Shown here: positions 49,076 through 53,582 of the stretch, in pieces | Position numbering within the stretch: the stretch's first letter is position 1 | How the letters are laid out: each line of letters begins with the position of its first letter | Assembly: GCA_000388065.2 (NCBI GenBank) | Contig: KB932204.1 | Length of the DNA: 61,602 nt | Reading direction: 5' to 3' (one strand) | From: Fonticula alba ATCC 38817 | Taxonomy: Eukaryota; Protista; Nucleariida | The notes under the pieces: model-generated | What the model saw: the letters and a program-made list of their open reading frames with translations, nothing else | Told to the model about the DNA's origin: nothing | The model's database searches: none | Made by a program: the position numbers and the translations under genes

Positions 49076-49636
49076 AGCTGATCGAACAGGAGGGGCACAG
49101 GGACAAACGGGTCCCGGACTCGGCGATTAACCGGGGATATCGATGTGGAGAGGGAGGAAAAGACCGAAGAGGTGGGGGGGGGGAGGAGAAAGGAACACAA
49201 AGGAGGGAGAGGGAAAAAGGGGCGGGGGAGGAACGGGAGGGGGGGGGGTCTCGATGGCCACTTGCGTCAATGCCAGCACGCTCGGACCAACGCTGCTCTT
49301 GAGCCGATCCGATCACCGTGAGCGCGTGATACGCCCACGTGCCTGACCGATGGTGGCGCCGGGAGCCAGTAACGCTTTTTTAAAAATCCCCGACCAGGAC
49401 CGGCCCCGCGCCCGGTGCCCCCCCCCCCCCCCCGTTCCCTGCGGCCCCTCTGCCGGGGATCGGGCGGCCCCATGCCCGGGAAAGGCGTTTTTCCCGGACC
49501 ACGGCGAGTGATCGACACCCGCGGCAAGGCACCTCTCCGCCTCCCTCCTCCCCTGCGCCTCCCCCCTTCCCCCCTCCCTCGCCTTTTTCCCTGTCTCTCC
49601 CTCCCCCCTCCCCCTCGCTCGTGCCCCTCTCGCATC

Positions 49637-52600
49637 ATGGCGTCTCGGCCTGCCCTGTCAAATGGCTTCTGCGAGCGCGCCTTCGGCGGAATAGATGGCT
49701 CCGATGTGGACGCGGCCGCCGCGGCCCTGCAGGAACGCCCCACCCTTCAACTTGTGTCCTTCAAGGCGCCCGGCCCCTCGGGACTGCGAATGTGCGCCAA
49801 CAGCCGGGGGGGGGGAAAAAAGAAACCCTGCCCTCCCCCTTTCCACGGCCAACGCCATGCACATCTGTGCCCGCCCACACATCCAACCACACACATGCCC
49901 ATCCATCCGCCTCTGCCGTACTTATGCCCCTCCCCCCCCCCCCCCGGAAAAAAAACGCATCCACAGCGCCCAACTCTCCGACGGCTTTCACTCCTTCCCG
50001 GCGGTGTTTGTCTCGTCCCTGAACCACATGTTCAGCGGCTCCCCCGGGGCCGGATCGGCCCCTCTCAAGGGCGGGCTCCTGCAAGAGGGGTCGGTCATCT
50101 GTGTCACCAACCATTCGGTCATGACGCAGCCCAAGTCGTGCGTCCACCCCTCCCCCCCTTTCCGGCTCCTCGCCTCCATGCCCCGGAACGCCCCGGCCTA
50201 ATGTCCCCGTGTCAGCCTCTCGCGCTTTCTCCTTGTCCAGGGCATCGACATCATCGGCCACCAGCCGATCCTCGGCAACCCGCTGAAGTTCCTGCCCTCG
50301 CCAGGAAGTGCTGATCAGCCAGCGGCAACCCCCTCCACCTCGGCCCCGCCGCTCGCCCCAACGCCGGGCCGCGCCCCGGAGACCCCCTCCCGCCGGCTTT
50401 CCGCCATGTCCGTTCGCTCTCCTGGCCAGGCTGATTCCAAGCTACCGGCCGATGTGCCCGTCATGTCGCTCAATCCGTACCTCCGGCAGTGGACCATTCG
50501 CGTGCGCGTGATGGCCGTCGATCCGCTGCGCTCCTTCAGCAATGACCGTGGCAGTGGGTTTGTTTTCTCCGCCGAGGTGGCCGATGCCTCGGTGCGACCG
50601 CGCTCGCCCTGTCTCCCGCCCCCCCCCCCCCCCCTCCTCCCCCCTCCCTGGCGCCCCGCCGGGCCTGTGCATTTAACCAATGTCTCCATGCCCCCACCCA
50701 CACGCCCGCACCCACATGCCCTCCTCGGTTCCCCCCCCCCTTCATCTAGGGCTCAATTCGTGTGGCCGCCTTCAATGATGTGGCAGAGACCATCTCAAAG
50801 CAGCTTGTTGTGGGCCAGTCGGTCATCCTGTCCCGCGGGATGGTCCAAGTCCCGCGACTCGCCCGGCCCATCATCGGCACCGAAAGCCGGTATGAGATCC
50901 GCCTGGACAGCCGGGCCCTGATCGACCCGTGCGACCCGGTTGATGGGCCACCCGGCTCGGATACCCACATTGCCGGGCCCACCACAGCCCAGGTGTTTGC
51001 CGAGCGAGTCTGGACCCCCATCAATGCCCTCTCTGGCTTTGGCACCGGCCACATCGTCGGTGCGCCTGCCATGCAGGATGTCCCTCTCCTCGCTCCCCCT
51101 CCTCGCCTGCACTCTTTTTCGCCGCTCGAGCAGATCGCCCCCCCCCCTCTTCCCCCCTCCTCCCAGCCGCCGTCCCCTGACTGCTCTCCTAACCCGGCCC
51201 AAACACCCAGACCTTCTCGCCGTGATCACGGACATCCGGCCCCCGGTAGCTGTGATGGCCAACGGTGAAATGGTCCTCCGGCGCATGGTGCAAGTGGCCG
51301 ATCCGTCCGGGGTTTCCTGTGCGGTTACCTTCTGGCGCGACCATGCGCTCGAGCTTTCCCGCATCATCGGCGACGTCCCGCACGGCGTGGCCGATCCCTC
51401 GGAGGTCGTCCGCATGCACCAGCCCGTGGCGGAGCCCCCACTGGCCGAGGACGTGGCCTCCACCTTCAGCCGACCTCTTGGCGTCGGGTCGGTCCTCGGT
51501 GTGCGCTCCCTTCGACTGGTGGAATACCAGGGGACCTATTCGCTGTCCTCGATGCAGCACTCGACGCGTCTCTTCCGCATGGGTGCCGACGCGCATACCG
51601 AACCGCTGGCTCGCTGGTTCCTTGAGGATCTTGGCGGCCCCGCTGGCGCGCGGCAACTTCGGAATATCTCCTCGCTGCGGGATGCCGCGGCCGCGGCCTC
51701 CTCCGGCGAAGGGAGCTCCTCCTTCGGGCCAGGTGGCGGTGACGCCCGGCAATTGACAAACCCCATCTACCTGGGCCAGATCCAACAGAAGGTCAGCCCC
51801 TGCCTAAATTCGTGGCCATCTCCGCAACCCCGGTCCCGCCCCTCCTTGCTCCCTCTCCCTCTGGGCAGACACTCATACATTCCTTCGCCCCTCCACCACT
51901 CCCCCCCCCCTCCCTTCCCCGCCACGCAGCTTCAAAACTTGAAGCCCGGCGACCCGGCGATCTTCTCCACGATTTGCCTCACCCCGGTGCGCCTGATGAT
52001 TCAGGCCCCCCTCACGTATCCTGCCGATGAGAATGGCAACAAGGTGCGGCCAGTTCTCGGGGCGACCACCGGCAGCATCCAATGGTCCAGCGCTCGGACG
52101 GGTGCCCTGCTGGACACCTTCGAGCACCGGTTCATTATCCGCCTCCGGATGGCCGACGCCTCGGGCAACATTTTCGTCAATGGTACGGTCAGGGTATTCG
52201 GGATGACTGTTTTTCGCCCCTGGCCCCCTGCTCCCCCTGCTCCCCCTGCTCCTCCTGCTCCCCCTGCTCCTCCTGCTCCTCCTGCCCCTCGGACTCTGCC
52301 CTCTCCCAATCACTGTCCCATCTCCCCCTGTCCTGCCTTCCTGCCGGCTGGCTTTCTCTCCTTTGGCAACCGCCACTAACCCGTGACTCTGGTCCATCTC
52401 TCCGACGAAGCCTTCGCCGCTCAGGCCGAGCCCATCATGGGCATGACGGCCGAGGAGTACTTCAACCTTCGCTTCGGGCCGAATGTTGGCATGCGCGACC
52501 GGCGCTCGACCCCGACCGTGGCCGCCATCGATCCCGAGGCGGATTTCGAGGCCGATCTCGAGGCCGCCTTCGAGGCCAATCTCGAGGCCAATCTCGAGGC

Positions 52601-52994
52601 CGATCTCAAGGCCGATCCCAAGCCCGGGCCGGGCTCCGAGTCGGGCCCCGGTGCCGATGTCAAGACCGAACATGCGGATTCCGGCTCCCCCGCTGTCGAA
52701 CATCCGGCTGTGGCCCTCCTCCGCAGCACCACCAAACTGGATGGTCTTCTGCCCGAGCAGGCGCAGCAAATTTTGGACCTGACCGCGGAGGACCTGCAGG
52801 ATTTGGTGCCGGCCGCATTGGCCGCGCACGAGCGGGTCTCTTTCTCTCGGCCTCTGGTGGCGCGGATTCGCAGCCGGGCCGAGATCTACAAGGAGGAGGT
52901 CACCATTCGCCACCACCTGATCGCCGTGCGGCCGGTGGACTTCGTGCAGGACGCGCGTCACCTCATCCAGGCCATTCATACCTACCTTTCCTGA
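49637..52994 (+). CDS. RPA1: Replication protein A large subunit (OB folds F, A, B, C), about 809 aa
   Basis: Exons 49637-49791, 49967-50137, 50216-50591, 50750-51059, 51211-51791, 51930-52182, 52411-52994 (2430 nt). Motifs QLSDG (DBD-F), SLNPYLRQWTIRVRV..DASGSIRVAAFND (DBD-A), VDLLAVI..DPSGVSCAVTFW (DBD-B), RFIIRLRMADASG..AFAAQAEPIMG..YKEEVTIRH (DBD-C). Confidence 0.93.
52225..52287. repeat. 9-bp tandem repeat (C[C/T]CCTGCTC) x7 in the last RPA1 intron
   Basis: Directly visible head-to-tail units. Confidence 0.9.
52536..52622 (+). repeat. 12-bp coding tandem repeat (GAGGCC[G/A]ATCTC-like) giving EA[D/N/A][L/F] x6 plus KADP in RPA1
   Basis: Translates EADFEADLEAAFEANLEANLEADLKADPK. Confidence 0.9.
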
Positions 52995-53582
52995 GGCGAC
53001 GGGCAGCTTTCGCCTCTTGCCTCCTCGTGCTTCGCGGTCCCCCCCCCCCCATATATCCTCTCCTCCTNNNNNNNNNNNNNNNNNNNNNNNNNNNCCCCCC
53101 CGGCCCGCATGTGCCACATGCATGTGGGTCGTAATAGAACTGGATCGCTGTGTTCACACCTGGCCATGTGTGTGAAAGCACTTGTATCTTCACGCATTGG
53201 TGTGCCCCCTGCTCGACGTGTGTCGGTGTATCTGCGCGAGGGGCAGCCATGCAGCGCATGCTCCTACATGTGCGCACGCACGTGCCTGCACCGAGGTACT
53301 CACCCAGGTGCACACACAGCCGAGGCGGGGAAACGCACGCCGGCCCAGCCTGGAAGCCGACCCGATCCGGGAAGCCGGCACCCATGTGCGATGAGTCACG
53401 GAACGCTCGCCGAACAGGGGCTTGGGCGGCGTCTCCCAGGCGGAGGTCGATGCCCAAGGGCACGGAAAGCCCGAGCCCACTGGCTGTCAAGTGCCACGCC
53501 CGGGCCGACAAGGTGGTCCGAGTGGCCGAGAGGAAAGGGCTGCTTGGAGGGGGCGCCACATGGCGACGGGGTATCAAACAGA

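What the first reader, a model, noticed from the sequence alone, without database searches (positions are those of the whole stretch)
52017..52110. RPA1 has lost all four zinc-finger cysteines of DBD-C
Canonical RPA70 has a C4 zinc ribbon (human YQACPTQDCNKKV..YRCEKC..FKYRMILSVNIAD). The colinear segment here is YPADENGNKV..IQWSSARTG..FEHRFIIRLRMAD, so the flanking residues (Y, NK, the R-xI-L strand, AD) are kept but no Cys remains. Domains F, A and B and the C-terminal strand and helix are present, so the gene is not simply decayed. A zinc-free RPA1 would lose the redox- and metal-sensitive element of the trimer core.
Basis: partly seen in the sequence, partly recalled or inferred. Interest (0 to 1): 0.7.

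Follow-up and report, generated by a model that had tools for sequence, protein, structure and literature searches.

The report
Zinc-free RPA1 in Fonticula alba
The amoeba Fonticula alba has an otherwise complete gene for the main single-stranded-DNA-binding protein RPA1 in which all four zinc-holding cysteines are replaced. This is real but not unique: red algae such as Chondrus show the same loss, so the "universally conserved" zinc finger of RPA is dispensable more often than textbooks say.

Summary
Window 49637-52994 (+) is a 7-exon gene that encodes, exactly, Fonticula alba H696_02577 (809 aa). It is an RPA1/RPA70 homologue with all four domains, F, A, B and C.

In exon 6, the segment that lines up with the C4 zinc ribbon has Asp564, Gly567, Ser585 and Thr588 where the four cysteines should be. 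The only other possible ligands in DBD-C are Cys547 and His597. The conserved residues around the ribbon are kept. AlphaFold still predicts the three-stranded ribbon, even from an alignment that contains only cysteine-free sequences. The introns next to exon 6 are too short to hide an alternative exon.

The loss is not unique. Among the 143 nearest full-length RPA1 cluster representatives, 24 lack at least one ligand and 5 lack all four. A whole red-algal clade, including the named Chondrus crispus Rpa1, has D/T/S/S-T at these positions, the same kinds of residue as Fonticula. Fungi (Allomyces, Ustilago) keep C4, so the loss is specific to the Fonticula lineage within its own clade.

Two questions remain open. 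I also could not reach a possible second RPA70-like gene elsewhere in the genome, noted earlier as s1-066717.

This scan had not noted a zinc-free RPA1 before. My verdict is a real and moderately interesting variant of a known protein.

The parts
49637..52994 (+). RPA1 gene of Fonticula alba (H696_02577, 809 aa). Seven exons: 49637-49791, 49967-50137, 50216-50591, 50750-51059, 51211-51791, 51930-52182, 52411-52994 (stop TGA 52992-94).
   Evidence: Each exon translation is an exact substring of P0001, and all six introns are GT..AG. P0001 was found with 576 bits. The public record is GCA_000388065.2 KB932204.1.
49637..50270 (+). DBD-F / RPA70N domain (residues 1-127, spread over exons 1-3)
   Evidence: A custom HMM built from 105 RPA1 N-terminal domains scores 34.5 bits, against 8.7 for the best of 300 shuffles. 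Pfam Rep-A_N itself does not detect it.
50454..50950 (+). DBD-A (residues about 189-301)
   Evidence: phmmer matches human RPA70 and Ustilago RPA70 DBD-A. Pfam tRNA_anti-codon OB matches residues 201-269.
51026..51593 (+). DBD-B (residues about 327-465), with an insert of roughly 35-50 aa
   Evidence: Pfam REPA_OB_2 matches residues 327-387. The alignment with human DBD-B runs to residue 383, with the Trp of 'TFW' conserved. The far end was set by eye.
51954..52991 (+). DBD-C (residues about 540-809), including the C-terminal strands and the trimerisation helix
   Evidence: Pfam Rep_fac-A_C, 5e-16. The AF2 model has pLDDT 79.7. The best Foldseek matches are human RPA70 DBD-C (TM 0.72-0.80 normalised by the target) and Ustilago 4gop_C.
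52017..52133 (+). Former zinc ribbon (Y561-F599), now without any cysteine
   Evidence: AF2 predicts strands at segment residues 41-44, 50-55 and 62-66 with both alignments.
52026..52028 (+). Asp564 (GAT) in the column of zinc ligand C1 (human C481)
52035..52037 (+). Gly567 (GGC), at the place of ligand C2 (human C486), just before the conserved N-K
   Evidence: Ustilago alignment 'egcnk' against 'engnk'. MAFFT puts a gap in this column.
52089..52091 (+). Ser585 (AGC) in the column of ligand C3 (human C500)
   Evidence: (Ustilago alignment)
52098..52100 (+). Thr588 (ACG) in the column of ligand C4 (human C503)
   Evidence: (Ustilago alignment)
52470..52751 (+). Lineage-specific insert of about 94 aa in DBD-C (residues 636-729). 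It contains a 12-bp x 7.4 tandem repeat (52529-52617) coding for acidic EADL/EANL units.
   Evidence: These columns are filled only by P0001 in A3. TRF result. AF2 confidence here is low to medium.

Best explanation
This is Fonticula alba's RPA1, the large subunit of the eukaryotic single-stranded-DNA-binding trimer, with the normal F-A-B-C domain order. In its lineage the C4 zinc ribbon inside DBD-C has lost all four metal ligands (Cys to Asp564, Gly567, Ser585, Thr588), and no substitute ligands lie nearby. DBD-C therefore cannot bind zinc in the canonical way.

The ribbon itself was not deleted. It persists as a metal-free three-stranded beta-ribbon.

My inference is that the two 'knuckle' turns are now held by hydrogen bonds from the Asp, Ser and Thr side chains to the backbone (Asx/ST-type turns), in place of the sulphur-zinc cluster, and by packing of the conserved Tyr561 and Trp583.

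A further inference is that the protein still forms the trimer core and binds ssDNA, because the C-terminal helix and the DBD-C residues matching the conserved aromatics are kept. It would no longer carry the zinc-dependent, oxidation-sensitive switch described for human RPA.

The same end state arose stepwise in red algae, so this is a recurrent and tolerated way for RPA1 to evolve.
For: Gene and identity:
- Each exon translation matches P0001 exactly, and all introns are GT..AG.
- P0001 is H696_02577 of Fonticula alba.
- The best solved relative is human RPA70, at 4e-23.
- Pfam finds Rep_fac-A_C, REPA_OB_2 and an OB domain. DBD-F is found by a custom HMM.

Loss of ligands:
- Shown: - Only C547 and H597 remain as possible ligands in DBD-C.

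Ribbon kept:
- AF2 with a 102-sequence alignment gives pLDDT 86-96 over segment residues 41-70 and the same three strands.
- AF2 with a 26-sequence alignment that contains no C4 sequence gives the same strands. There the ribbon is among the best-predicted parts of the model (pLDDT 82-89).
- Foldseek matches human and Ustilago DBD-C.

Functional residues kept:
- Y561, D607, F617 and W201 lie in invariant columns.
- F617 aligns with the Phe of human 'VTCFQES', and Y774 with the Tyr of human 'VETYNDE'. From my own knowledge these are the DBD-C DNA-contact aromatics.

Precedent:
- At least 24 red-algal RPA1 clusters, including Chondrus crispus Rpa1, have D/T/S/S-T at the four positions. Early-branching red algae keep 1-3 Cys.
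- Red algae are reported to have generally a single RPA1 (PMC4731521).
- From my own knowledge, Brill and Bastin-Shanower (1998) found that ssDNA binding by yeast domain C is not strictly dependent on zinc.
Against:
- P0001 has the longest terminal branch in both trees (2.05 and 2.6, against medians of 0.8). This shows fast evolution, which could also mean relaxed constraint.
- One DBD-A aromatic (the equivalent of human F269) is Leu.
- Pfam's own Rep-A_N model misses the N-terminal domain.
- An earlier scan note reports another 'RADX/RPA70-like multi-OB' gene elsewhere in this genome. I could not read it, so I cannot show that P0001 is the only or the replicative RPA1.
- AlphaFold does not model metals, so the retained ribbon is a prediction.
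- The hydrogen-bonded-turn mechanism is an inference from residue types only.
Confidence: 0.65

Rival explanations
1. P0001 is a specialised or subfunctionalised RPA1 paralogue, comparable to plant RPA1 groups, Teb1 or MEIOB. The replicative RPA1 of Fonticula, with an intact C4 ribbon, would then lie elsewhere in the genome.
For: An earlier first-stage note (s1-066717) reports a 'possible RADX/RPA70-like multi-OB-fold protein' on another piece of this genome. P0001 is very divergent, at most 36% identical to any relative, and has the longest branch in both trees.
Against: P0001 keeps the full F-A-B-C architecture of a canonical RPA1. The exhaustive phmmer search found no second protein at E<=1e-30, so there is no recent duplicate. 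None of the composition-matched (GC-rich-type) top hits that I could trace came from Fonticula. The other gene was described as RADX-like, meaning less canonical than this one. Red algae appear to manage with a single zinc-free RPA1.
Confidence: 0.2
2. Fonticula's gene shares its origin with the red-algal zinc-free RPA1, through an ancient zinc-free lineage or horizontal transfer, instead of losing the cysteines independently.
For: The replacement residues are the same (Asp at C1, Ser at C3, Thr/Ser at C4) and the 'YP-x-D' context is shared. The best phmmer hit is the red alga Porphyridium. With the zinc columns removed, the ML tree puts P0001 next to the red-algal clade. The AU test does not reject placing it inside the zero-Cys subclade (p=0.31).
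Against: Support for that placement is only 28% SH-aLRT, and a position as sister to fungi is equally acceptable (AU p=0.38). Long-branch attraction is expected for a branch of 2.6. Within red algae the loss is stepwise, because early branches keep 1-3 Cys, so the Asp/Ser state arose inside that clade. The gene has Fonticula-type GC-rich exons and GTGCG introns like its surroundings.
Confidence: 0.08
3. The gene is decaying (a unitary pseudogene in the making), or the cysteine-free exon is an assembly or annotation artefact and an alternative exon supplies the C4.
For: The branch is very long, DBD-B and DBD-C carry low-complexity inserts, there is an N-gap about 75 nt after the stop codon, and no RNA evidence was obtained.
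Against: The reading frame of 809 codons is open across seven exons with six canonical introns. Residues in invariant columns are kept in every domain. The Pfam match to Rep_fac-A_C runs on from exon 6 (profile positions 13-69) into exon 7 (73-146), leaving no missing segment. Introns 5 and 6 are 138 and 228 nt, too short for a replacement 84-aa exon, and their translations are low-complexity. Exon 6 contains no ambiguous bases.
Confidence: 0.05

Closest known systems
Canonical eukaryotic RPA70/Rfa1 (human RPA1, PDB 8rk2, 1l1o; Ustilago 4gop; yeast 6i52)
   Same: The domain order is the same: F, A, B, then C with the C-terminal trimerisation helix. The DBD-C fold matches (TM 0.78-0.80 normalised by the target). 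Conserved Tyr, Trp, Arg, Asp and Phe residues surround the ribbon.
   Different: All four zinc ligands are replaced. The spacing between the two knuckles is 17 residues instead of 13 in human (my count from the sequence). Inserts of about 94 and 15 aa sit in DBD-C and another in DBD-B. The sequence is much more divergent.
Red-algal RPA1, e.g. Chondrus crispus 'Replication factor-a protein 1 Rpa1' (P0208) and about 23 unnamed relatives
   Same: These proteins also have the full F-A-B-C architecture, with zero Cys at the four positions and the same kinds of replacement (Asp, Thr/Gly, Ser, Ser/Thr) in a 'YP-x-D ... W-x-S' context.
   Different: They form a well-supported clade of their own (98-100% SH-aLRT) with visible intermediate states: Porphyridium C-CC, Rhodosorus C-CT, Galdieria S-CT. 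They lack Fonticula's inserts. Their relationship to the Fonticula gene is unresolved.
Archaeal RPAs without a zinc finger (Methanosarcina MacRPA1, Haloferax RpaC)
   Same: They are multi-OB-fold ssDNA-binding proteins of the RPA family that work without a zinc motif (PMC3273820).
   Different: They have a different domain count and architecture, no RPA70N, and form homomultimers. In these proteins the zinc finger is absent as a module, whereas in Fonticula the ribbon is retained in metal-free form.
RPA1 paralogues with specialised roles (Tetrahymena Teb1, PDB 3u50/6d6v; CTC1; MEIOB)
   Same: They have RPA70-like OB folds, and Teb1 OB-C is a structural match of the model.
   Different: Those proteins lack the complete F-A-B-C arrangement, and they score far below RPA70 against this protein. 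Nothing here points to a telomeric or meiotic role.

Membership tests
RPA1 / RPA70 (large subunit of replication protein A) | Two tandem high-affinity OB folds, DBD-A and DBD-B | tested here: met
   phmmer matches human RPA70 at 4e-23, aligning residues 128-383. Pfam finds an OB domain and REPA_OB_2.
RPA1 / RPA70 (large subunit of replication protein A) | C-terminal OB fold DBD-C (Pfam Rep_fac-A_C) ending in the trimerisation helix | tested here: met
   59.2 bits against a cut-off of 28.5. The AF2 model has a terminal helix at segment residues 274-289. Foldseek matches DBD-C of human RPA70.
RPA1 / RPA70 (large subunit of replication protein A) | N-terminal protein-interaction OB fold (RPA70N/DBD-F), present in long-type RPA1 | tested here: met
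   A custom HMM scores 34.5 bits against 8.7 for the best shuffle. Pfam Rep-A_N is not detected at E<=10.
RPA1 / RPA70 (large subunit of replication protein A) | C4 zinc ribbon inside DBD-C. This feature is conserved but, on the evidence here, does not define the family: 24 of 143 nearest clusters lack at least one ligand. | tested here: not met
   D564, G567, S585 and T588 occupy the ligand positions. I therefore file the protein under RPA1 by homology and architecture, but not under 'zinc-ribbon RPA1'.
RPA1 / RPA70 (large subunit of replication protein A) | Forms a heterotrimer with RPA2 and RPA3 and coats ssDNA | not testable with these tools
MEIOB / Teb1-type specialised RPA1 paralogues | Lacks RPA70N and is closer to the paralogue family than to RPA70 | tested here: not met
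   DBD-F is present. The listed top phmmer hits whose DBD-C could be aligned, and all the best structural matches, are RPA70-type.

The most novel reading that the evidence does not exclude
RPA1's zinc ribbon has been converted to a metal-free ribbon at least twice independently, in the Fonticula lineage and in red algae. Both conversions use the same chemical solution: Asp, Ser or Thr in place of the knuckle cysteines, whose side chains hydrogen-bond to the backbone as the sulphurs did. In these organisms the zinc-free protein is the only replicative RPA1. If so, zinc and redox control of RPA is not a universal requirement of eukaryotic DNA replication, and nature has already supplied the sequences needed to build a stable zinc-free RPA.
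Probability: 0.4. Interest if true: 0.55.

Novelty: new variant of a known kind. Interest (0 to 1): 0.4.

Why it matters
Reviews describe the RPA70 zinc finger as evolutionarily conserved. It is reported to be needed for structural stability, DNA replication and redox regulation (PMC8210275 and PMC4731521).

Natural, full-architecture RPA1 proteins with no zinc ligand show that the metal is dispensable in some eukaryotes.

They also offer ready-made variants for testing what the zinc actually contributes: stability, DNA binding, or sensing of oxidation.

The practical weight is modest. This is a change in one structural element of a well-understood protein, not a new system.

Tried and rejected
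No splice-junction evidence was obtained.

2. Search for a Fonticula paralogue.
   - The search for homologous proteins with a 50-sequence RPA1 alignment returned only P0001. This was probably because the words were swamped by low-complexity sequence.
   - I traced the hits with the most Fonticula-like composition, and none came from Fonticula.
   - The scan's notes gave one lead, s1-066717, whose sequence I could not reach.

3. Phylogenetic placement. An AU test on the 143-row tree did not finish in two runs. On a 57-row tree the tests did not reject any of three placements, so the origin is undetermined.

4. Alternative exon. I rejected this on intron lengths and on the Pfam match continuing from exon 6 into exon 7.

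5. Alternative metal site. I rejected this because DBD-C has only C547 and H597.

6. Literature. I found no paper describing a eukaryotic RPA1 without the zinc motif, and none on Fonticula RPA.

7. Joined protein. Exons were searched one at a time by reference, and the full-length protein used afterwards is the database's own record P0001.
Full report
**What is there.**
The window is GC-rich (60-74%) eukaryotic DNA with short GT..AG introns. Reading 49200-53400 and the ORF list, I built a seven-exon model on the + strand: 49637-49791, 49967-50137, 50216-50591, 50750-51059, 51211-51791, 51930-52182 and 52411-52994.

A word-based protein search with the long open frame covering exons 5-6 returned one protein, P0001. 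This is 'hypothetical protein H696_02577 [Fonticula alba]', 809 aa. Each exon, translated on its own, is an exact substring of P0001. The pieces cover residues 1-809 apart from the four codons that are split by introns. All six introns are GT..AG, and four begin GTGCG. The public record is GCA_000388065.2, contig KB932204.1. After I used the database's own protein.

**Identity.**
- P0001 matches Pfam Rep_fac-A_C (5e-16, 59 bits against a cut-off of 28.5), REPA_OB_2 and an OB domain.
- Its best solved relatives are human RPA70 (4e-23) and Ustilago RPA70 (5e-19), with three colinear stretches covering DBD-A/B, the first half of DBD-C and the C-terminal strands.
- Pfam's Rep-A_N model does not see the N-terminus. 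A profile I built from 105 RPA1 N-terminal domains scores 34.5 bits on residues 2-125, against 8.7 for the best of 300 shuffles.

The F-A-B-C architecture is therefore complete.

**The observation.**
Window 52017-52110 codes YPADENGNKVRPVLGATTGSIQWSSARTGAL. HMMER aligns it with the human C4 stretch (YQACPTQDCNKKV...YRCEKC) and with Ustilago (YTACASEGCNKKV...NWRCEKC).

I made two independent multiple alignments, one of 150 full-length proteins and one of 102 DBD-C pieces. The four columns that hold Cys in 80-92% of sequences hold D564, a gap, S585 and T588 in Fonticula. By its position directly before the conserved N-K, Gly567 stands where the second cysteine does.

The protein has only five cysteines in all (12, 97, 295, 374, 547), and residues 540-640 hold a single histidine (597). 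No alternative tetrahedral site can be assembled from these.

The surrounding conserved residues are kept. Y561, D607 and F617 sit in invariant columns and R598 in a nearly invariant one. W583 lines up with a Trp that is invariant in the zero-Cys alignment A3 and matches the Trp of Ustilago RPA70.

An alternative exon is not plausible:
- The Pfam match runs from profile position 13-69 in exon 6 straight on to 73-146 in exon 7.
- Introns 5 and 6 are only 138 and 228 nt.
- Their translations are low-complexity.

**Structure.**
AlphaFold2 on residues 520-809 with a 102-sequence alignment gave mean pLDDT 79.7. It predicts three short strands at segment residues 41-44, 50-55 and 62-66, which is the ribbon, at pLDDT 86-96. 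The OB barrel and terminal helix are also predicted.

Foldseek's best matches are DBD-C of human RPA70 (9pd3_N TM 0.80, 8rk2_A 0.78, normalised by the target) and Ustilago 4gop_C, followed by Teb1 OB-C and Pyrococcus RPA.

That alignment is dominated by zinc-binding sequences, so I repeated the fold with 26 sequences that all lack the four cysteines. The overall confidence fell to 66.4. The same three strands were predicted, and the ribbon was among the most confident parts of the model (82-89). AlphaFold does not model metals, so this only says that the sequence is compatible with keeping the ribbon.

**How unusual is it?**
An exhaustive phmmer search of 1.84 billion cluster representatives found 1514 relatives. 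Only P0001 itself scored below 1e-30, and the nearest relatives are 25-36% identical.

Of the 143 full-length representatives among the best 150:

| State of the four columns | Number |
|---|---|
| CCCC | 119 |
| At least one ligand missing | 24 |
| No Cys at all (P0001, P0006, P0012, P0042, P0132) | 5 |

The named sequences among the degenerate ones are red algae:
- Porphyridium: C-CC
- Rhodosorus: C-CT
- Galdieria: S-CT

A chytrid has CCCD, and Allomyces has CCCC.

A tree built with the zinc columns removed needs at least 12 changes of the C4 state. It recovers a fully supported red-algal clade in which every member is degenerate.

Searching with P0132 then brought in about 23 more clusters of that clade, including the named Chondrus crispus Rpa1. 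All of them read YP-[SGA]-D-P-x-T-K-K-K ... W-x-S-E-S-[ST]-G. That is Asp, Thr, Ser and Ser/Thr at the four positions, the same kinds of residue as in Fonticula. A plant RPA1 study states that red algae generally have a single RPA1-like sequence (PMC4731521). The zinc-free form is therefore probably their only RPA1.

Reviews call the motif evolutionarily conserved and important for stability and DNA binding. Zinc-free RPAs are described only for archaea (PMC3273820). I found no paper describing the eukaryotic cases.

**Origin.**
P0001 has the longest terminal branch in both trees (2.05 and 2.6, against medians of 0.8) and an atypical composition. In the 57-row tree it sits beside the red-algal clade, but with only 28% support.

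| Placement tested | AU test p |
|---|---|
| Sister to fungi | 0.38 |
| Inside the zero-Cys red-algal subclade | 0.31 |

Neither is rejected, so the gene tree cannot decide. Fonticula belongs to Holomycota, which is established taxonomy, and fungi keep C4. The loss inside red algae is visibly stepwise. Independent loss with convergent replacement residues is therefore the economical reading. A shared origin is not excluded.

**Mechanism, and what is shown against inferred.**
Shown:
- The ligands are gone.
- The ribbon segment and its conserved aromatic and charged neighbours are retained.
- The domain still matches DBD-C in sequence and in predicted fold.
- Other eukaryotes carry the same state.

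Inferred:
- DBD-C is zinc-free.
- The turns that used to wrap the metal are now capped by Asp, Ser and Thr side chains (Asx/ST-type turns).
- The trimer core and ssDNA binding work without metal.
- The oxidation-sensitive switch described for human RPA is absent.

The F617 and Y774 matches to the human DBD-C aromatics and the intact terminal helix support continued function. The Leu at the position of human F269, and the fast rate of evolution, call for caution.

**Limits.**
- I obtained no RNA evidence.
One earlier search had used an ORF reference that ran through them. Locus L002, fetched, contains them but was neither read nor searched.
- I could not enumerate RPA1-like genes in the rest of the Fonticula genome. 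It remains an untested candidate paralogue.

**Verdict.**
The feature is a real, probably functional, zinc-free variant of RPA1. It is not unique, because red algae show the same state. It is therefore of moderate interest, mainly as part of a wider and apparently undescribed pattern of repeated loss of the RPA zinc ribbon's metal site.

Noticed in passing
P0208 (Chondrus crispus Rpa1), P0042, P0132, P0195-P0216; not in the window: A whole red-algal RPA1 clade has no cysteine at any of the four zinc positions (YP-x-D-P-x-T-K-K-K ... W-x-S-E-S-S/T). Early-branching red algae (Porphyridium, Rhodosorus, Galdieria) keep 1-3 of them, so the loss was stepwise. I found no paper describing this.
   Followed up: partly
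window 52529-52617 (within 52470-52751): A 12-bp unit repeated 7.4 times codes for acidic EADL/EANL repeats. It lies inside an insert of about 94 aa, specific to Fonticula, in DBD-C between the post-ribbon helices and the last two strands. AlphaFold predicts a long helix there with low to medium confidence.
   Followed up: partly
I left it out of all later searches. It lies outside the coding sequence.
   Followed up: no
window 53069-53094: An assembly gap (a run of N), flanked by poly-C tracts, lies about 75 nt downstream of the RPA1 stop codon. Long poly-C or pyrimidine tracts also fill most introns of the gene.
   Followed up: no
window 49792, 50138, 50592, 51060: Four of the six introns start with GTGCG. 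The other two start GTCAGC and GTACGG. This looks like a strong GC-rich donor consensus for this genome.
   Followed up: no
window about 51360-51510 (P0001 residues about 388-436): DBD-B carries an insert of roughly 35-50 aa relative to human RPA70, between the conserved Trp strand and the next strand. This was seen by eye and was not analysed.
   Followed up: no
P0019 (Gorgonomyces haynaldii, a chytrid), P0120, P0128: Some RPA1s have three Cys plus Asp or Gly at the fourth position (CCCD, CCCG). These may be intermediate or alternative zinc sites.
   Followed up: no
P0011, P0141, P0071, P0098 (unnamed, one supported clade) and P0008 + P0026: Two further unnamed eukaryotic RPA1 clades keep only one or two of the four cysteines. 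These are additional independent degenerations, and their organisms are unknown.
   Followed up: no
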